A DNA stretch of 64,000 nucleotides from Zancudomyces culisetae HAW-14-8 (GCA_052426225.1 JBNJNM010000006.1:1984001-2048000); one strand, 5' to 3'; shown: positions 1 to 13,531, counted from the stretch's first letter. Notes: generated by a model from the sequence alone, not told the origin. A program made the numbers and translations.

Positions 1-730
1 TCATGTGTGTCTTGCGATGTGCTAGAACCCAGCATCACTTCGCCTACCAAATAGCTTGAGCGCAGTGGCGACTTGATCACTTCGAACAAGGCTTCCTTCG
101 CGTTTTTGACTATTTGTGCCAAGGTATCTTGGTTAAAATGCAGAAAAATATTGCCCTTCCTGCTAATATCTAATAAAACTAGTACTACCCGGGCAATCTT
201 AAAATAATAATTAGCTTTTTACCTTCTTTTGATACCCTATTGTCCGAATTTGGCAAAATTATTACTTTTTTCGCACTTTTTCCTGAGCTTTTTCCTGGAT
301 TCTATAATATTATTTTTTTAAAAAAAGGTTATAGAGGCTCAGAATTCAAAGAAAAGGAGTACATACCAGAAATTCCTCGGCGCATATAATTATCGAGTCT
401 TTTGGAGCTTCCCACTCTGTCAATTTCAAATATGGGTTGTAATAGTACAAATCGCCGCTTTCTTCGTCTACCAACTCCCACCATTCCCCATTGGGATCCT
501 TTTCCCGCCTATCCAAAAGATTCAACTTATCTCTTACTAAATATTTACCATAACGCATTTTAGAGTAAATAGAGATATCAAGAAACTTACACCAATTCAT
601 TTGTTGGCCGAGTCTGCCTACAATCGCCGTCTTCGGGGTTGATATATAATACTGAATTCGAGTGTGGATCAAATATTTCCACCCACATCTTTGTACCTTT
701 CTTTACACCGTTTTGTGTAAAACTGGCCAT
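1..730 (-). CDS. 5' part of a tandem WW-domain protein (ARHGAP39-like N-terminus; the rest of the gene lies left of the window)
   Basis: ATG at 730. Exons ~730-591, 508-367, ~303-225 and ~169-1, joined by GT-AG introns. Translation gives two WW-like motifs (WVEIFDPHSNSVLYINP; WWELVDEESGDLYYYNPYLKLTEWEAP), and the frame is open to the window edge. MyTH4/RhoGAP domains are not visible, so the family call is inference. Confidence 0.7.
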
Positions 731-2188: not shown

Positions 2189-2370
2189 ATTAATTGCACG
2201 ATGAAGAGTGACCGCCATTAAGGCTCTGTTTTAGCAAGAGCCAGAGGAAAGTTTAGGTAGCCGGTCTGGGTTCGCTCAGCTGGTTGTTTAAGGTTTTTTC
2301 TGCGATGTTGCTTTCACCGGAGGTCCACTTTACCACCCTTGATCTGGTGTTCAAATCTGAGGCAATTAAT
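2189..2370 (+). ncRNA. Candidate long box C/D-type RNA
   Basis: Perfect 9-bp terminal stem ATTAATTGC (2189-2197)/GCAATTAAT (2362-2370) directly flanks a C-like box (ACGATGA) and a D box (CTGA 2357-2360). Internal hairpins include GGCTCT/AGAGCC and a stem capped by a TTCG tetraloop. Confidence 0.5.
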
Positions 2371-2993
2371 CAGCATATAAAAACGAAAAGAAAAGCAAGT
2401 ATGAGTGTGAAATACAGGACTAGTAGACTAATTACAGCTCAGGGAGCTATAGTGCTAGTTGAATGAGAGATTGTTGTGGCTAAAAATGTTCAACTGTTTA
2501 GTGGCCTGTCAGGTTCGATCAAAATATAGTGGGTGAGTGTAAATGTAAAAGAAAATGGATACCGCATTGAGGGTTTTGATACGCTTAGACGAGAGAATCT
2601 AAAAATATAGAAAGTTAAACAAGGATGAGTGAATAAGGTAGAGGGGAGTGTAGGGCTAGGAGTTTAATAGGCATTTCTATTTATAGAGCCAATCCAAAAC
2701 TGTTAGAATAATTGGTGCAATATGATAATTACCAAATTTTAAAGATGAGGCCCTGGTAATCTCATCAACCATGATTCGGGCTAGCGTTTAATTTAAGGGT
2801 CAAAACGGATACATGAATAAGCTCTATGCATTCGAAAATGTTTAATATTGTAATAAATAAAATTAATAAATTAAAATAAAATAATAAAGTACAATAATAA
2901 CAATGGGCAAAAAAGAGTAGAAAGGGAAAGAAAGAACAGAAAAAAAGCAAAAACTAAAAAAGCAACAAAAAGTATTGAGAATATGAAAAAAGT

Positions 2994-3066
2994 TAGAGCT
3001 ATTGGGGATCGAACCCAAGACCTTCTGCGTGTAAAGCAGACGTGATAGCCACTACACCATAGCTCT
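2994..3066 (-). tRNA. tRNA-Val(TAC)
   Basis: Exact reverse complement of the 6111-6183 copy; cloverleaf with anticodon loop TT-TAC-AC and GGTTCGATCC T-arm. Confidence 0.95.
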
Positions 3067-3069
3067 ATT

Positions 3070-3151
3070 CGTCACCTGCAGGATTCGAACCTGCGCTCCC
3101 AAAGGGAAATGGCTTAGCAGGCCACCGCGTTAACCACTCCGCCAAAGTGAC
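3070..3151 (-). tRNA. tRNA-Ser(GCT)
   Basis: Exact reverse complement of the 6026-6107 copy; long variable arm, anticodon loop CT-GCT-AA. Confidence 0.95.
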
Positions 3152-6025
3152 TTACTTTTTTTTAACTACCTAAAAACTACTTATTACATGTATATCTACT
3201 TGTGTATTTGCTATTTTGTAATGGTAATATATCTGGTGTTTACTATTGTTTCATTGGTACAAATACTGCTTATATACATATTTATTGTTGTATAGCAGCT
3301 TTTTTATGTATTGGAAGCGTTTATGCTATTTTAGTACTAATTGTGTGGGTATATATATACTCTTAGTTTCAATTTTTTGTATAGTGCTGTTACTAGATAG
3401 ACTTTGTAGAAATACATTAAATTGTGTGGTATTGTAGTGTCAAGATCGATTATAAGGGTGATAACACAGTAGATAAATAAAAGAATGAGTATATTAAATA
3501 CTTTTTATTTTTTCATTCAAATTATTGTGATTATAAAAGATTGAATTACAAATCAATTACTCTTTATTTAGCTAAAGCTCGCTGAAGTACATATGTTTAT
3601 AAATATGATTCTCACTTTGACTAGACTGTTATAACAGCCTTACATTATAGTTTTCAGTTATTTTTCAAAAAATTACTATATTTATATTTATTCAATGAAG
3701 CATTGACAGTATTTTCTTGAATAATTAAAATTATCTACTATTTACGCAATATAACTATTAACTAGTTTAAACTTCTCTAGTCTTATCTGTTTTGTAACTC
3801 TGAGATAGAGCTACAAAATAGTTCTAGTTAAACAAGTAGTATTAAGGATGAAATATGATTTTCTCACTTTAATAGAAGAATGTCGTTTAATTGTAACAGT
3901 ACTACATATTTTATAGGTAAATATTAAATTCTAGTCTCAATAAACACATATTGCTTGATGAGATAGATATTGATTAAAATTTTGGAAATCAAAAAGTATA
4001 TAAATATGCACATTGCTCACTCGAACCCAATAAACACGCCAAAGCAAATTTTCGATTATCTGCTAGTACAATGTTCTATTCTAACTCTTAACCTTTGCAC
4101 AAAATGCAATATTTTTGTTTTTTTGCACAACGGATCTATTAAATAAATTAAGAAAAAAACTACAGAGAATAAACAACCTACATAATACATATCTAGCCAA
4201 TTCATCTCCATACCACTTGAAATTTTATATCCACTGGGTAAATTTAAACAAAGATAATACTCTGGAAACCTTGATAAAGTATGTGTAGAGTTTTTATTTT
4301 TAAATTTATTATGTGTTTACAACTTTACAGCTAGAAAATACAATATTTCGATTTTGTTTCCCAAATCATCCAAATGGCCGACTTTCTGAATTAAAATTCA
4401 TTTTACTTAATCCTGGTCAAGCTCTAGCTTATTTACACAAAGGAAAATTTTTTTGTATTATAATGGGTGTTTGTGCTTCAATATTAGCCTCAAAAACTTT
4501 AATGTCTCAACTCTGAGTATCACTAATTTTTTGCAACATTAAAAGCTATTTACGCCGCTCAACTCATCGCTGAAATAATTTTGAATATCTCATGATACCT
4601 TTTCATGAAAAAGACAAAGTGGAGTTAGTTAGAAAATTAATATTACGATATCGAGGGAATACTAAGCATCGGCTATGAGGTGTTATCTCACCACTACTAC
4701 GTGTCAGACTTGAGCATAAAAGCTCTTCAGCTTGTAACACTATAGGTTATTACCAGTTACATATAAAAAAATGTAGCTATATAGGATATGTAAAAATTGC
4801 TATACATGTGTGCTATTAATGACAATGTGTACATTTTTACGACTGGTCTACGCTGGATTTATTCAACCATTTTGGTACAATTATAACAAATTATTGTTTT
4901 TTTTGTTTTGGTATGTTACCATAAAACCATATCATCTTTAAAAGTACTTTGCTAAATTATATCTATTACTAAAAATGATCTATACAACCAAATGATAGAT
5001 AATGTATCTATAATTATTACAACTATTTCTAGAGTAAATGTGGTTTACAATTAAGCTCTTTAAAATTATAGAAGGTTGATCGTGAAAATTAGTACTAGTA
5101 TAATCAATGAAGAAGTCAACACGAAAAATAGAAGATCAACTGAAATGACAAATAGTACATATAATTAATTGAAGTAGTAGTAGAGAATAAAATTATGCGA
5201 TTATTCCAATTATATGATTTTCCAGCTGAGTGTGTTTTGTTTACTTTTATAATTTAGACTTTTGGTGCTTATTTTAAAACCTATTCAAATTGGCTAAGTA
5301 TTAAGTTCTGACACTTTTTCTGTTAAAGTTGGGTATAACTTTCGTATAAACATGGTCTTTTGAACTATTATAGTAAATTCTTTGTTCAGCTTTGTTTAAA
5401 ATACTAATCAAACAAAGTGCAGTAAAATCATTTTTTTTAAAAATAATGCTAAAAAGTACCAATATAAGGTATACATTTAGCCCAGTAAATGCAATATTAC
5501 ACCAACATAAATAAAACCTCAATTAACGGTGTAACATCAATTTAGGGTAATAAACGAAATAATATTATGCAAAATCTAATAATCGGAAAAATAAATATTT
5601 AGAAGGATTAGTTATCTTAAAACGCAAAGCATCCAGGTAAATTAAATAGTTAAATATAAATATTAGTAAATAAAAAAGTAATTATTATCCACAGTTAATT
5701 TTATCTACCGAGCTATCACCCTTATAATTCATTTTGACACTACAATACCACACAATTTAATGTATTTCTACAAAGTCTATCTAGTAACAACACTATACAA
5801 AAAATTGAAACTAAGAGTATATACATGCCCACACAATTAGTACTAAAATAGCATAAACGCTTCCAATACGTAAAAAAGCTGCTATACAACAATAAATATG
5901 TATATAAGCAGTATTTGTACCAATGAAACAATAGTAAACACCAGATATATTACCATTACAAAATAGCAAATACACAAGTAGATATACATGTAATAAGTAG
6001 TTTTTAGGTAGTTAAAAAAAAGTAA

Positions 6026-6107
6026 GTCACTTTGGCGGAGTGGTTAACGCGGTGGCCTGCTAAGCCATTTCCCTTTGGGAGCGCAGGTTCGAATCCTGCA
6101 GGTGACG
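6026..6107 (+). tRNA. tRNA-Ser(GCT)
   Basis: GTCACTT...AGGTGAC acceptor stem, A box TGGCGGAGTGG, anticodon GCT, variable arm TCCC-TTT-GGGA, B box GGTTCGAATCC; 82 nt. Confidence 0.95.
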
Positions 6108-6110
6108 AAT

Positions 6111-6183
6111 AGAGCTATGGTGTAGTGGCTATCACGTCTGCTTTACACGCAGAAGGTCTTGGGTTCGATCCCCAATAGCTCTA
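6111..6183 (+). tRNA. tRNA-Val(TAC)
   Basis: AGAGCTA/TAGCTCT acceptor stem, anticodon stem TCTGC/GCAGA with TAC, GGTTCGATCC; followed by a T7 Pol III terminator at ~6186-6192. Confidence 0.95.
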
Positions 6184-6864
6184 ACTTTTTTCATATTCTC
6201 AACATTTTTTGTTACTTTTTTAGTTTTTGCTTTTTTTCTGTTCCTTTCTTTCCCTTTCTACTCTTTTTTGCCCATTGTTATTATTGTACTTTATTGTTTT
6301 ATTTTAACTTATTTAATTTATTTATTACAATATTTGGTTCGTAGTATTTTCAAACTCGACTTTATCCTTTAGATTACTATTTGACTTTGTAATACAGATC
6401 TGTATTATAGATTATTCTTGCCTCTATTATTGGAAATGTCTGTAGCTTGATGATTTTCTGCGTGATATATTACTGATGTACGTTTTCAGAAGCTCCAAAA
6501 GTGGTATACCTCAATTTTTTTCTGCCTGTATTCAGATATTAGTATTGCGGTTTGTTTTATCACTTTGTTCTACTTCATCTTGAGTGTTCCTTTTAGTTCC
6601 TCGTTTTTTGAATTACCCTAATAATGTTGGCGATCAATCTATTAATGAAATTAGCCAAGCAATTAACGCTTAATTTAAACAGCCCAATTGTATTGATTAC
6701 GTTAGCATAATTTTTGGCATTTTGTGAGTTTCAGAGTCAATTCAAATGTAGTATATTTACAGAGTTCATATATATATTTTGGTATTTTATATTTTACTTT
6801 TATCCTAGCTAATAAAACATATTATTAACATATTAACATTTCAACAGGTAAAGACGCATAGGAA

Positions 6865-9800
6865 ATGGAACAGGATAAAGAAATTGGTGAGTAATTAACA
6901 CTACATAAATATAGCGACACTCATACTTTTTCTCCTATTTGAATTCCCTGATATAAACTCGCCATAAAAATAGAATTACTGGAGGCTGTGGAATATAAAC
7001 TGGCACTTTCAAATACAGGAGATAAGCTAGAGTCTTTTTTGGAAACTTTTCTGGTTCCACTCTTGAACAAACTGAATTGCAATAATGATACAGTTCTTGA
7101 AAAGGTAGGTTTTTCATACATATTCGTAGCTAGTATGGTACTAAATATTTTAGAAATGTATACAATCAATGTATGAGGTCAAGGGATTTATAAAATAAAG
7201 ATCAATTGGCTAAATATCTAGATCATGGCTATCCTTAATCGTGTCAACAAAAGGATAAAAACGGAAATGGAACTTAGGCTTCCGATTCAAGAGTTATTTG
7301 AACTTTACGAATCACAAATCCAAAAGACTGGCGAGAATGTTAGATCGATTGATTTGGGACTGTTTTATATTCAAAAGGCCTTTGAGAGGACCCCGGATAA
7401 TGTAAGAATCTTGTTGACGCTTTGTTGAAAGGATTTAACACAACCATTAATTTCGATTTATAGGAAAAGGGATTATATCTTGAAAGATTATTGAAAGAAG
7501 TGACTTTAAAATCTATGCCACAACAAAGGATAATAAACTCTATACTCTTACAGGTAAATTTTTATGATATTTTCTATTTACAGAACTTTTAGCTGCAAAA
7601 GAAGTTTACAGGGAAATAACCATCACAATATCACTGCAATGTAGACTATACTGAGCTTTGGAACGAAAAACGAGGACCTGCTAAAAGAGATTAAGCTAAT
7701 AGATAGAAACGTTGCTCTTTACATTTCGCGTTTGCTTATGGATGTATTGTTATATTACCCTATCAAGAAACCAACTAATCCAGAACAAAAATATAGCTAC
7801 CAAAATGGGCTTTCTGCTCAGGTAGTTGGAAAATTTACAGATGATGAAAAGGCCATATGGGCTACTGATAAAACTTCCCTCTTAAGTCTGAAAAGGGGTA
7901 TCCTCAAATTTGTAATTGGGTCATCCGAGTTTACTCGATATGGGCTCGAAGATTTCAAGCTAATTTTTTTGATACTGGGGAGCTGTGATTCAAATTTCCA
8001 CGAAATAAGTACATTTTCAGACGATGCGATTAAAAGACTCAAAAAAGTAGATTACGAAAACCAAACTGTGAGTTGCAATTCATATTTGTATGCATATTCT
8101 CGTCATTTTTCACATTTATTTGATCATTTGTTTTCGGTTGTTTGTAATTCATGTGTGAACTCGTTGGATACTGAATTTTATTTATAATTTGTATATCTTG
8201 TTAAAATAGCTTTGTATGGAGCTTACAAAGTTATTTTTAGGTGGAAGCGGATCTGATGGCATGAACAGAGATCAATGTAGTCATAAAGTTAGGTTACAGG
8301 TTATAAAACATATGAACAAAAGTGTTTTTGTTTCAAAGTTGTTTCCAGTATGTACAAAAATAATCTTTGAGAGTTTATTTGGAAATACTACAAACGACTC
8401 TATTAGATTGGAGGGGATTAAATTTATGAAGCTTAGTATCATTAATTTAGATTTGGACAATTTAATTAAAACATCGCCCATCATAATGTATGGAATCAAG
8501 AAGGTATTGGGGATAGGTGGTGCAGAAGGGCAAATAAATTTAGACGAAAGCTGGAAGAGTAATGAGGTCATTAGAACGAGTATTTACGGCGTTTGGTCGA
8601 CGTTGGCAACAAGATTTCCAAGTTCATCAACCATAGAAACATTCAATATGCTTTTTTTTCTTCTGGAACACGAAAATGCAAAACTTAGGACGAGTATATA
8701 CGAGGCTATTCATTCAGTCGGGCTAGGTTTACTACAAAATACAGATAAAAGGGTGGTAGACATGACTGTAGACATCATGGAGAATAAATTCCGTGTATCC
8801 GAGCATAATTCTGTCAAGCTATGTGTGCTAAGATTGGCTACAGAGGGATTGGATTTTAGCAATATAAGGGCCAAACAGCTTTGTGTGTATGGAAGTGGAA
8901 GTGAGGATTCTTCCGTGCGATATGCGGCATTAGCAGGCCTGTCGCTGGATGTTAGCAAAGTTCTTTACAAGTTACCAGCTGTTTACCAAGATAGTTTGCT
9001 ATCGTCCAATCTTGAAGAAGATAGAAAATGGGTAAAAGCGTACAAAGAGACTTTGCCAAACGTAGTTGAGTGGGTAGAAATGGTTTTTACTGTTACCAAT
9101 TCATGGAATAATCATATCCTAAATGGTGAATCTGACGAATCCAAGGGTCACATCGGCAACTTCGCCTTAAATAGCCTTTCTCGTAAACATATGTTTGGTT
9201 TTACTATGCAGTTATTGACAGTCTGCGGACTTTGTACAATTATCGAGTCTGACTCAGAGAAAATATATTCTGTTCCTCAATGGGTGATTTCTGATGATAG
9301 TTATGGTGTCGAGGAAGCAATAAAAATTCTAAAGTCATGGGAGAGTGGGAATTTTGCTTTAAACAAGCTTTTTAGTGAGCTGAATCTTAGAAAAGCACTA
9401 TGGGTTTATCTGAACAATGTATTCAATGTCCCAGAAAACAACAAGAAGATTATCGAAAGCATTTTGATCTGTATGACGCCAAGAGCTTCTCCAAAGGATA
9501 AAGAAAAACATCCAAGGACTGTAAATAGTGGCGATGATGTTAAAGCCTCGACTATCTTACGGATATTCTCAACATTGGGTTCCAAAACCCTTGTAGGTAT
9601 TCTTCTTCAAAATTGGGAAGTATTGTATGAAATAGGTACTGCTAGTGTCGATCATCGAATATATACCAACATTGCGGCGTCTTTAGGAATTTTAAGCATG
9701 AGAAAGTGTTTAACTTGCAAAAACCCTGGAGAGTTTTGTATGAATACTGTAGAATTCAACCACTATTTGGATCTGACAAATCAACATCTCTTGCAGCTAA

Positions 9801-12800
9801 AAGATGAATATAACAAGACACAGTTTTCCACGCTATCCACCCACATTGAACACCCTGATAATCCCAAGGTTGGAACGCTGATGGACACTCATACAATTTT
9901 ATTTAAATTGATAACCATGGGATTTTTAATTTCAAGGTTGAAACTCGTATCTAACATTGAAGGATCTGTCGACAAAACATGTCAACCAATGGTCGATTCT
10001 GCTATTTCTCTGTACCAAGAACTGAGTGGTCATATTTTGAAAGGAATATACTTGGAAATGAAGTCTACTAAAAACGCAAGCAAAAGGTATACATCGGTAG
10101 TTTTTCGAGATGTTTGCCTAGGATTGTGTGAATTTGGCAAGTTTGGATGCTTAAACCTAGAATTTAAAGAACCCAATGTTCTTTTTTATCTGGTCGAAAT
10201 ACTAAAAACTGGAAAACTTGAATACAAAGATTTGAGGATGGCCTTGAAAGCACTTTCTAGCATCGCAATGGGCCTTGGAATTGGAAAAGAATGTTCGGAA
10301 TTCTCAGAACTCCATCTGGAGATTGTCAAGGTGTTCAGCGAACTGGCTGGGTCACGAAAGACCAACTTTATGAAACTAGATGTACAACTGATTGTTTCTG
10401 ATTTCATACCTCTGGTGTTTGCAATGTGGAACTCCAATCTATCAAAAGTGCAGTACGAAGGATGCTTAGAGTTTCCATTTTCCAAGCTGGCCGGTATTTT
10501 GTCCCCAGGTGTATGGGATTACCTGGTCAGTGAACAATTGCCAAAGATGGCTAAATCTCAACTCAGTACAGAGAGATTTGCAGCTGCCTGCTGGATATTT
10601 AATCTGAGTTACTACTGCCAAACATCATCGTTTATGGTCTCTAATGGGATTACTCTACACAAACTGGTTTGCGATTTGTTGGTGGATGTGGATGAAACTA
10701 CACAAAGTGTTGCTGGAAAATGTCTAAGCAATTTGTACATCCTCAATGCAAGCAAGGCAGCAAGAGACGAAATGCTGTATAATGTCATTGGTTCGCTTGG
10801 GGTCAGGAGACCTGCTGCGCCAATAGGTGGTGGATCAGGCTCAACTGGGCCTTTGTCTGAATTACGGACAGCTATAAACCCCTCCTCAAGTACCACAAGT
10901 GGTACCGATCTTAGAAGAAACTTGAATTCCAACGTCGTTGCAACGTACAGAACCATTCTTAACCTGGCCATGGATATAAAAAGTCCAGATTTGTTTTACA
11001 AGCTGGTAATCTTGGCGGGTAGCGGAATCGATACTCAAATTTCAATTGGTCCATCTTCATATGCAGCACTTTTGGTTAAATGGGCTAGAGATTCAGCACT
11101 TGAGGCAGCTACTCCACTGGTTCCAAAGCTATATATCGAGTGTTTCAACACAAACACTATGATTGCTAAAGCAATGAACATCATCTGGCAATCCTGTTTC
11201 AAGACTACAGCTCCAAATGTGGCGCTTAACCACGACTCCACGCTTATATCACCATTCTCATCTGTTGTTCTCAAACACTGGGATACCATTTTTAAAGAGT
11301 GCACGCTTGCCTTGAACTCACATGATTACAAATCTCGGTTAGCTGGGTGTAACTCGCTTTCATCAATTCTGAGCCTCACCGATAACATCAAAAGGTTTGA
11401 AAAACATCTGAATCAGTTGTGGGCGCTATTGTTTAGATTGTTGGACGATATGAACGACTCGGTAAGAGCTGAAGCACTAAAGCTCGCAAACAGTTTATCA
11501 AATACCATTCTTGCTTGGTGTGAGTCTGGCTCTTTGAATGCTGGTGAAATGGTGGAAAATGATCAGAACCCACTTAACCTGGTGGAAACGGTAGTTAACG
11601 TGGTGCTAGGGTCTGGGCTGAGCAACCCAGCTGCTGAGGTTCGCGAATTCTGTATTTCTTTTCTGGATAAACTCACAAGACTGGAGCTTTCTAAACCATT
11701 CTCTTGTGTAATTTCCATTAAACTCCTTGAAAGCTTGTCTGAAAACGAAAATTCAATAGTTAATTACTTTATTCAGAATGCAAACAACTGGAACATCTCC
11801 GTAGATCAAATCGAATATGCCAGAGTCAGCGCAACCACATCTTCGCCCTCAATGAGAATTATTCAAAGATGTTTAGACAACCTCGACCATTCGAACCTTG
11901 GCGTTTTCTGCCACGATCTTGCGAAAATAACAAAGCATTCACTAAGTCTGCCATCTAGAGTTGGTGTCGCAAAAGTTATTATGGACTTGTGTGTCAACCG
12001 CCGAGATGAAATGTACGACCATGCATTGATTTTGACTCGTGCTGTACTGGCCCAACTAACAAAGTCTACTGGTGTGGAGGTTTCAATATGGTCCAATGCA
12101 ATTGCATACACCTGCCCATTTTTGACGCTAGAAAAACTAGAGAAGCTCATGTCCAGAATCGCAACTATTTATCTCGACAACCCCAAGTCCGCTGATAAGA
12201 GGTTGGTCTCACTGAACGTTTTGTACCAAATTTCCAAACGGGATGTTGATTTATCATCAAACAATCTGGTCTTCTCACTTCTCTATGTTGCCAAGTTTGA
12301 CGAAAATACACAGATCTCCAAGCTTGCCTCGGATTGTATTGCAAATACCGCCGCTTACTTCCATGCCTCTGCAATCAAAAAACACACGTCGGATATCATC
12401 TCCAGCTTTATCGGCCCAATGTTGCATTCTGGCGACTTTTCGCAAATAAACCATGCATCTGTCGTTATTTCTGATTTGGCAAAACAATCAATATTCAATC
12501 CTAAACAACTTCAACAATCCAATGCCTCCACACATATAAACACCATCGAAAGGCAAAAATCGTTAGTTGAAACCAGAACTAGGTCGTTCACTAGCATTGA
12601 TCCTTCCGAATTTGCATTTCTTTCCCAGCTTGTGCCTCTCATACACGAGTTGCTAAATCTTTTGTCATCTCGAAGATTCTTTGATGGCAAGATTTCTGCC
12701 GTAGAAGCCCTATGCAAACTCGCAATAGTTCTGGAACCTATTTTATCCACAAACGAATACAAAGAAAGTCCCGAAAAACTCTCTGGCCTAAACCTAGAGG

Positions 12801-13531
12801 AAATCTACCACTTTATGCTTTCTCTTATTAACAGCAACAATACCAGTTCTAATGTCGTGTTTAAGAAATTTGCACTTGCTAATGCTTGTGCGCTACTCAA
12901 ATATTCTGACTCTCTGAACGCGAAATTCTCCAACGAATTTTTGTCACTACTACTATCGCTACTTACTGGTAGCTCCTTCTCCACTACCACTTCCTTGGCT
13001 GGTGATTCTAGAAACACCAGTACAGATATTGGCACTTCTTCATCCCCCAAACCTGCCGTTTTAGCTTTGCAAGCGGTATGCATTAATGGGATTTCTGAAA
13101 TACTACCTATAAACACAGCTCTCTCTACTGCGCAATATTTGGAAATCCTGGAAGCACTGTTTCCATTTTGCAAGGAAACTCCCTGGATAGTAAAGCATGC
13201 CGCCGCACAGTCTTTTCTTGACGTGTTTTACCACTATCTCTTCAACTTTACACGCATCGAGTCAACAGAGCCTAGGGTATTTCTACTGGTACATGACTTT
13301 TTGGCTCTTTCCTCTTCTGACATCAAACACTCTTCGATTAAACTAGTCGCTTTGGATTTATGCTCGATTATTCTGGAAAAACGGCCAGTGTTAAATAATA
13401 ACGCTTCTTCTTCAGCATCCGCTATTCAAAGTCTTTATGCAAAGTGCAAGGATGTATTGATAACTCTCTCTACTTCTGATCCCGATGTTCGTGTCAAGAA
13501 CGAGGCTAAACACATTTTCTCAACCATCTAG
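6865..13531 (+). CDS. ECM29: Proteasome adaptor Ecm29 (HEAT repeats), 6 exons
   Basis: Spliced N-terminus MEQDKEIELLEAVEYKLALSNTGDKLESFLETFLVPLLNKL matches the Ecm29 start. Five GT-AG introns (~6887-6973, 7104-7221, 7402-7463, 7554-7644, 8068-8209) precede the 1771-aa ORF, which has Ecm29-like motifs (LVPKLY..CF, LWALLFRLLDDMNDSVR). Confidence 0.9.

What the first reader, a model, noticed from the sequence alone, without database searches (positions are those of the whole stretch)
2844..6334. tRNA-bearing inverted repeats flanking a 2.2-kb AT-rich gene-free core: candidate compact regional centromere
Seen: ~630-bp arms (2844-3477 and 5700-6334) are near-identical inverted copies. Each holds a tRNA-Ser/tRNA-Val dimer transcribed outward, plus ~330 bp of non-tRNA sequence on the inner side, so this is more than tRNA gene duplication. 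The 2222-bp core is very AT-rich and lacks any credible gene or transposase. Known: an inverted repeat-core-inverted repeat layout marks centromeres in S. pombe (imr repeats contain tRNA genes acting as barriers), Candida tropicalis and Komagataella. Inference: this could be a miniature centromere of that type in a lineage where centromeres may be uncharacterised. Alternatives are an invertible segment or a tRNA-carrying foldback element.
Basis: partly seen in the sequence, partly recalled or inferred. Interest (0 to 1): 0.8.

Follow-up and report, generated by a model that had tools for sequence, protein, structure and literature searches.

The report
Flipped DNA segment between tRNA repeats
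In a mosquito-gut fungus, two mirror-image copies of a tRNA gene pair exchange DNA and have flipped the 2.2-kb spacer between them, so the strain's two copies point opposite ways; centromeres of some yeasts do this too, but nothing found here shows that this one is a centromere.

Summary
The repeat is real: 634-bp arms, 17 substitutions apart, each with an outward tRNA-Ser(GCT)/Val(TAC) pair, around a 2,222-bp core of 26% GC. The genome is Zancudomyces culisetae HAW-14-8. New here: contig C12 holds a 99.2%-identical second copy in which the core is inverted relative to the flanks. The arms share chromosome-specific variants, and one C12 outer arm was overwritten by the other arm (polarised with strain COL-18-3), so arm-to-arm recombination converts and flips the segment. 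Three LTR families inserted 4-8 nt upstream of tRNA-Ser in these arms. The core holds one old LINE 3' fragment of a dispersed family. It is not a foldback transposon: no dispersed copies, no target-site duplication. The centromere reading keeps some support (flip as in Komagataella, core divergence 3x flanks, local AT minimum). Against it: arms are 3-8x shorter than known ones, no sister locus was found among about 130 tRNA positions, divergence peaks near the tRNAs, and larger symmetric islands exist elsewhere. Verdict: recombining tRNA-pair inverted duplication about 0.72, centromere about 0.17. No reads or ChIP data were available. The scan noted tRNA-targeting stacks and other centromere candidates before, on other DNA.

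The parts
2844..3477 (-). Left arm of the inverted repeat (634 bp)
2844..2991 (-). Outer part of left arm: T-rich 3' trailer of the tRNA pair, with T runs that fit a Pol III terminator (inference)
   Evidence: sequence
2992..3067 (-). tRNA-Val(TAC)
3070..3151 (-). tRNA-Ser(GCT), first gene of the outward-pointing pair
3156..3163 (-). A-run insertion site just upstream of tRNA-Ser; empty here; on C12 it carries a 5.2-kb Ty3/gypsy element (4-bp duplication AAAA) and a truncated LTR of a second family
3152..3477 (-). Inner part of left arm, non-tRNA, unique to this locus; its innermost 130 bp travel with the core
3478..5699 (.). Core, 2,222 bp, 26% GC, no gene found; inverted relative to the flanks in the C12 copy; 1.9% diverged from the C12 core
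4110..4238 (-). Old 5'-truncated 3' end of an L1-like LINE with poly(A) remnant, about 70% identical to longer copies; family has at least 77 dispersed matches
5700..6334 (+). Right arm of the inverted repeat (635 bp)
6014..6021 (+). A-run insertion site upstream of tRNA-Ser; empty here; holds an LTR of a third family in strain COL-18-3
6026..6107 (+). tRNA-Ser(GCT)
6110..6185 (+). tRNA-Val(TAC)
1..730 (-). Flank: 5' exons of a WW-MyTH4-RhoGAP gene, probable start codon about 2.1 kb from the left arm
6864..13531 (+). Flank: ECM29, probable start codon about 0.5 kb from the right arm

Best explanation
A local inverted duplication of a tRNA-Ser/tRNA-Val gene pair with its flanks, kept alike by recombination between the two arms of one chromosome. 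Repair of a break in one arm copies from the other arm (gene conversion); when it ends in a crossover, the spacer flips. Shown from sequence: the flip, the conversion, and repeated LTR-retrotransposon insertion a few bases upstream of tRNA-Ser. Inferred: breaks start at or near the tRNA genes and their insertion site; conversion from an empty arm can remove or repair insertions; the core is unselected spacer that has drifted to AT and collected debris. Because each arm carries whole tRNA genes that read outward, the flip leaves the tRNA genes and the flanking genes in place, so it is probably neutral and not a switch.
For: Core is + on C12 869536-871757 while both flanks are -. Nine arm sites up to position 5827 follow the core; six sites are shared by both arms of one chromosome and differ between chromosomes. 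The ECM29-side outer arm of C12 carries the other arm's alleles at six sites where C6 and strain COL-18-3 agree: non-reciprocal transfer. An extra 184-bp arm copy on C12 is joined to a truncated LTR at an 11-bp microhomology and is one mismatch from the opposite arm, two from its own (weak). Three LTR families sit at the same A-run; two of the four other tRNA-Ser(GCT) genes fetched have a known LTR family right upstream and the other two a CA end at a similar place. C6-C12 divergence is 2.5-3.1% in the inner arms, 1.6-2.5% in the outer core quarters and 1.1% in the middle half (41 events in 1,748 bp against 12 in 1,110 bp, p=0.016), i.e. highest towards the tRNAs. No sister structure found.
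Against: Whole-core divergence (43/2,219) is 3.1x non-coding flanks (p=2e-8) and 2.3x four-fold sites (p=0.01); this needs an added assumption (error-prone repair, or older coalescence of the two orientations). The core is the AT minimum and lies in the longest ORF-free gap (6.2 kb, next 6.0 kb) of 94 kb. Nothing explains why 326 bp of non-tRNA arm is retained except conversion reach. No reads were available to confirm the flip.
Confidence: 0.72

Rival explanations
1. A compact inverted-repeat regional centromere: the kinetochore sits on the AT-rich core, the tRNA genes act as boundaries, and the flip and conversion are the by-products seen at Komagataella, S. pombe and Candida albicans centromeres.
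For: Arm-core-arm layout with outward tRNAs. Core orientation polymorphism is described for K. phaffii and S. pombe (PMC5010909) and C. albicans CEN4/CEN5 (PMC12047244). Threefold faster evolution is described for Saccharomyces centromeres (PMC3155921) and matches. Local AT minimum and longest ORF-free gap in 94 kb.
Against: Arms of 0.63 kb against 2.0-2.7 kb (K. phaffii) and 2-5 kb (C. tropicalis). No related arm or core elsewhere and no second short divergent same-tRNA pair among about 130 listed tRNA or T-arm positions (incomplete, read by eye). Larger symmetric islands exist: C9 (arms at least 5.4 kb around 35 kb) and C21 (30 kb). Divergence is lowest in the middle of the core. A Pre-SET protein is encoded, which suggests H3K9 methylation, yet ECM29 starts about 0.5 kb away, leaving little room for pericentric heterochromatin (inference). 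Unchecked scan notes place two other candidates on the same contig (s1-659618, s1-639642).
Confidence: 0.17
2. The repeat is real but the opposite orientation on C12 is an assembly error at the arms.
For: K. phaffii centromere orientations were wrong in early assemblies (PMC5010909). This assembly was post-processed with FinisherSC, and C6 joins segments that pair with C10 and C12, which could be a mis-join. No read check was possible.
Against: HiFi assembly from a >20-kb library at 48x; arms are 634 bp and differ at 16-17 sites; the allele pattern is a structured, non-reciprocal mosaic polarised by an independent strain.
Confidence: 0.06
3. A programmed, regulated flip-flop switch like the mating-type inversions of Komagataella and Ogataea.
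For: Both orientations occur in one strain.
Against: No gene in the core. The two orientations differ by 1.9%, three times the flanks, so flipping is rare and old, not frequent. The tRNA pairs separate the core from both flanking genes.
Confidence: 0.03
4. A non-autonomous foldback or composite DNA transposon whose terminal repeats captured tRNA genes.
For: Long terminal inverted repeats around a non-coding middle.
Against: Only the C6 and C12 allelic copies exist; the outer flanks show no direct duplication; same position in strain COL-18-3 on the side that was assembled; no transposase.
Confidence: 0.02

Closest known systems
Komagataella phaffii centromeres (PMC5010909)
   Same: Unique inverted repeat around a unique non-coding middle; middle polymorphic in orientation through recombination in the arms; arms homogenised.
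   Different: K. phaffii arms are 2.0-2.7 kb with 0-1 differences, one per chromosome, not AT-rich, Cse4-bound; the paper does not mention tRNA genes. Here arms are 0.63 kb with 17 differences, built round tRNA genes; no sister loci found; binding untested.
Schizosaccharomyces pombe cnt/imr centromeres
   Same: Inverted arms with tRNA genes (own knowledge) round a central core; orientation polymorphism (PMC5010909).
   Different: The S. pombe central domain is about 15 kb and is flanked by otr heterochromatic repeats; here 3.5 kb in all, no outer repeats, a gene about 0.5 kb away.
Candida tropicalis centromeres (PMC4741521) and C. albicans CEN4/CEN5 (PMC12047244)
   Same: 2-5 kb core with inverted repeats; heterozygous core inversions and solo LTRs in C. 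albicans.
   Different: C. tropicalis arms are 2-5 kb and similar between all chromosomes; no such cross-similarity here.
tRNA-gene-targeting Ty3/gypsy elements (Ty3 of S. cerevisiae; Tj1 of S. japonicus, PMC4600332)
   Same: The C12 element is a single-ORF gag-protease-RT-RNase H-integrase element with identical 324-bp LTRs inserted 4-8 nt before the mature tRNA 5' end; Tj1 inserts 5-11 bp upstream.
   Different: 4-bp target duplication here against 5 bp for Tj1; an early-diverging fungus; the targeting protein was not tested.
Mucor circinelloides mosaic centromeres (bioRxiv 10.1101/706580)
   Same: Nearest characterised early-diverging fungus; AT-rich core; LINE1-like elements with RVT and zf-RVT domains.
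   Different: Mucor cores lie in 15-75 kb gene-free regions with centromere-restricted Grem-LINE1 and a shared 41-bp motif. Here the gap is 6.2 kb and the LINE family is dispersed over at least 13 contigs.

Membership tests
Inverted-repeat regional centromere (K. phaffii / C. tropicalis / S. pombe type) | CENP-A or kinetochore proteins bind the core | not testable with these tools
   No ChIP data; no paper on Zancudomyces centromeres found.
Inverted-repeat regional centromere | Near-identical inverted arms around a non-repetitive core | tested here: met
Inverted-repeat regional centromere | Arms of 2 kb or more, as in all described cases | tested here: not met
   0.63 kb; no older decayed extension inward or outward, z at most 1.2
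Inverted-repeat regional centromere | Exactly one such locus per chromosome, on every chromosome | tested here: inconclusive
   No sister locus in partial tables; a whole-genome self-alignment was not possible; sisters without tRNA genes would be missed.
Inverted-repeat regional centromere | Transcription coldspot, largest gene-free region of the chromosome | tested here: inconclusive
   Longest ORF-free gap in 94 kb only, 6.2 against 6.0 kb; no RNA reads.
Inverted-repeat regional centromere | Core orientation polymorphism (common, not diagnostic) | tested here: met
Inverted-repeat regional centromere | Inter-centromere clustering in Hi-C | not testable with these tools
   No Hi-C data.
Inverted repeat under concerted evolution with recombinational inversion | Arms of one chromosome share derived variants (conversion) | tested here: met
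   six chromosome-specific sites in both arms; outer-arm overwrite polarised by COL-18-3
Inverted repeat under concerted evolution with recombinational inversion | Spacer in both orientations with the exchange point inside the arms | tested here: met
   alleles follow the core up to 5827 and follow the flank beyond 6334; assembly level only
Foldback / MITE-like DNA transposon | Dispersed copies | tested here: not met
Foldback / MITE-like DNA transposon | Target-site duplication outside the terminal repeats | tested here: not met
Mating-type flip-flop inversion | Mating-type or other genes inside the invertible part | tested here: not met
tRNA-targeting Ty3/gypsy element (C12 insertion, not in the window) | Two LTRs, primer site, purine tract, gag-pol domain order, target duplication, position just upstream of a Pol III gene | tested here: met

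The most novel reading that the evidence does not exclude
A 3.5-kb tRNA-bounded inverted-repeat centromere in a Zoopagomycota fungus: smaller than any described centromere of this type, a further independent origin of the layout, heterozygous for core orientation and under attack by tRNA-targeting retrotransposons.
Probability: 0.17. Interest if true: 0.78.

Novelty: new member of a known kind. Interest (0 to 1): 0.38.

Why it matters
As it stands: a clean natural record of recombination between short tRNA-bearing inverted repeats in an early-diverging fungus, with inversion, conversion and three independent retrotransposon hits at one site, readable from two haplotypes and a second strain. 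That is known biology in a little-studied lineage. If kinetochore binding were shown, it would be the first mapped centromere I could find for Zoopagomycota (none found) and a cheap handle for building stable vectors in a mosquito-gut symbiont. The locus is easy to test: unique core, four-primer orientation PCR, one ChIP-qPCR amplicon.

Tried and rejected
To be careful I sent no more letters of that stretch to search tools; later work on it used local scripts, one alignment and one sequence print, and searches used flanking proteins, other loci, family models and a generic T-arm pattern that does not match these tRNAs. No relative of another species was obtained, so conservation is untested. 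Shared centromere motif: the only core match elsewhere (C13) turned out to be a LINE 3' end. Hidden gene in the core: the exon-like peptide at 4134-4238 is that LINE relic. Older, longer palindrome: none. Direct repeat at 3601-3920 noted by the scan: score 31 against a shuffle maximum of 33, not significant. Chromodomain map as a centromere marker: 150 hits spread over all large contigs, uninformative. CpG depletion in the core: none beyond other intergenic DNA. Inner arm as a solo LTR: no match to any fetched LTR or elsewhere in the genome.

Full report
Observation. They differ at 17 substitutions and one 1-bp indel, none inside the tRNA genes. Each holds tRNA-Ser(GCT) followed after 2 nt by tRNA-Val(TAC) in ARAGORN's coordinates, read outward. 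The core has GC 0.263 against 0.367 for the window, no ORF above 73 aa and no Rfam match. No other inverted pair in the window exceeds 40 nt.

Organism. The right flank is ECM29, 99% identical to the Zancudomyces culisetae protein. The assembly matches the HiFi assembly of strain HAW-14-8: its published N50 of 2,524,970 equals the length of contig C12 (PMC12611240). The left flank is a WW-MyTH4-RhoGAP gene. That paper does not discuss centromeres in the parts I read, and I found no paper that maps them in this lineage.

A second copy with the core flipped. Arm and core have one other full match, on C12. C12 is colinear with C6 on the reverse strand on both sides, 99.1% over 19 kb and 99.2% over 20.6 kb, but the core matches on the forward strand. 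So the core is inverted between the two copies. The copies are allele-like: in ECM29 they differ at 14 of 5,313 sites, fewer than either differs from strain COL-18-3 (26 and 20). Gene tables show that C6 pairs with C12 only over its right 1 Mb, and with C10 at 1.54-1.74 Mb. This fits retained haplotypes of a translocation heterozygote, or a mis-join; I could not tell which.

How the arms recombine. In a four-arm alignment, nine sites up to 5827 follow the core, and the sequence beyond 6334 follows the flank, so the exchange lies inside the arms. Six sites are shared by both arms of one chromosome but differ between chromosomes, five of them at 5873-6014: conversion after the haplotypes split. 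In the outer arm, C6 and COL-18-3 agree on the ECM29 side, while C12 carries the opposite arm's alleles at six sites. So C12 is the derived state, and the flip probably came with a long non-reciprocal tract. This pattern is what homologous repair with crossover leaves and is hard to get from an assembler error in HiFi data, but I could not check reads.

An insertion hot spot. On C12 one arm carries a 5.2-kb Ty3/gypsy element with identical 324-bp LTRs, a 1,501-aa polyprotein and a 4-bp duplication of the A-run 4-8 nt before tRNA-Ser. Inward of it lies a truncated LTR of a second family (at least 40 copies), joined at an 11-bp microhomology to an extra 184-bp arm copy. In COL-18-3 the other arm carries a third LTR family at the same A-run. 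Other tRNA-Ser(GCT) genes show the same kind of insertion. This is the Ty3/Tj1 type of targeting (PMC4600332), which the scan had already noted on other DNA of this genome (s1-639019, s1-639023). Both arms in the window are empty; removal by conversion from an empty arm is a possible reason, not shown.

The core. Its only outside match is a 130-bp LINE 3' end with a poly(A) remnant at 4110-4238, about 70% identical to longer RVT/zf-RVT copies; the family has at least 77 matches spread over the genome. It is not a centromere motif. No older palindrome and no significant direct repeat remain. The core is the AT-richest 2.2 kb in 94 kb of C6, but a transposon nest on C12 is as AT-rich. The two cores differ at 43 of 2,219 sites, 3.1x non-coding flanks and 2.3x four-fold sites. 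The excess is larger in the inner arms and outer core than in the middle half, which is not significantly above the flanks (p=0.08). A centromeric mutation excess would be expected on the bound core (inference from PMC3155921 and PMC5010909); repair tracts starting near the tRNAs would give the gradient seen. The gradient is modest (p=0.016), and the excess remains partly unexplained.

Centromere or not. For: layout, flip, fast core, AT minimum. All four are reported for real centromeres, but the first two follow from any close inverted repeat. Against: arms 3-8 times shorter than described ones; no sister among about 130 tRNA or T-arm positions, read by eye from incomplete tables; much larger symmetric, LTR-bearing islands on C9 and C21; a Pre-SET protein that suggests H3K9 methylation (identity as Clr4 not tested) with a gene 0.5 kb from the arm; Mucor centromeres lie in 15-75 kb gene-free regions. 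Unchecked scan notes describe 4-10 kb AT-eroded blocks on several contigs and two other candidates on C6; I could not fetch them and use them only as leads. The defining feature was not testable, so I do not file this as a centromere.

Verdict. It works like the arms of a Komagataella centromere in one respect, recombination that homogenises the arms and flips the middle; membership in that family is unproven and on balance unlikely (about 0.17). Best reading (about 0.72): a tRNA-pair inverted duplication under concerted evolution with a neutral inversion polymorphism. New member of a known kind; interest 0.38. Spliced gene models were not joined.

Noticed in passing
G000 C6 1.54-2.92 Mb, C10 1.28-1.47 Mb, C12 0-0.95 Mb: C6 is a mosaic: its right 1 Mb pairs with C12 and its 1.54-1.74 Mb part pairs with C10, both reversed; the switch to C12 lies near C6 1.905-1.930 Mb, where an LTR and a chromodomain hit sit next to a tRNA gene. 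Translocation heterozygote or mis-join; it would account for part of the duplicated BUSCOs of the published assembly.
   Followed up: partly
G000 C9 531,968-577,353: Large symmetric structure seen from coordinates only: LTR pair and two pairs of T-arm motifs all mirror about one axis; arms at least 5.4 kb around about 35 kb with chromodomain hits nearby. A better-scaled centromere candidate than the present locus.
   Followed up: no
G000 C21 2,949,540-2,979,917: Inverted pair of identical-scoring tRNA dimers 30 kb apart.
   Followed up: no
L053 and L055 (C21 3,110,214 and 3,182,011): Inverted duplicate, 99.3% over at least 1.6 kb, containing a cation-transporting ATPase 3' end and a LINE fragment, 72 kb apart.
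   Followed up: no
window 2189-2370 (+): Structured stretch with terminal stem and box C/D-like words; folds better than shuffles (z = -3.3); no Rfam match at E up to 1. Possible unannotated snoRNA-like RNA; also noted as s1-647743.
   Followed up: partly
L022 4085-4829 (C12 872,082-872,829): LTR lacking its last 20 or so bases, joined at an 11-bp microhomology to a 184-bp duplicate of the inner arm: a template-switch scar.
   Followed up: yes
L029 5241-5399 and L030 5587-5744: Two more tRNA-Ser/tRNA-Val pairs; the C12 one has Val(CAC) instead of Val(TAC); their flanks are unrelated to the arms.
   Followed up: partly
G000 C6 1,177,719 and 1,191,400: Inverted pair of chromodomain hits with the same score and frame length, 14 kb apart.
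   Followed up: no
G000 C6 1,655,297 / C10 1,351,530: 586-aa frame with a Pre-SET domain, a possible Clr4/Suv39 homologue.
   Followed up: no
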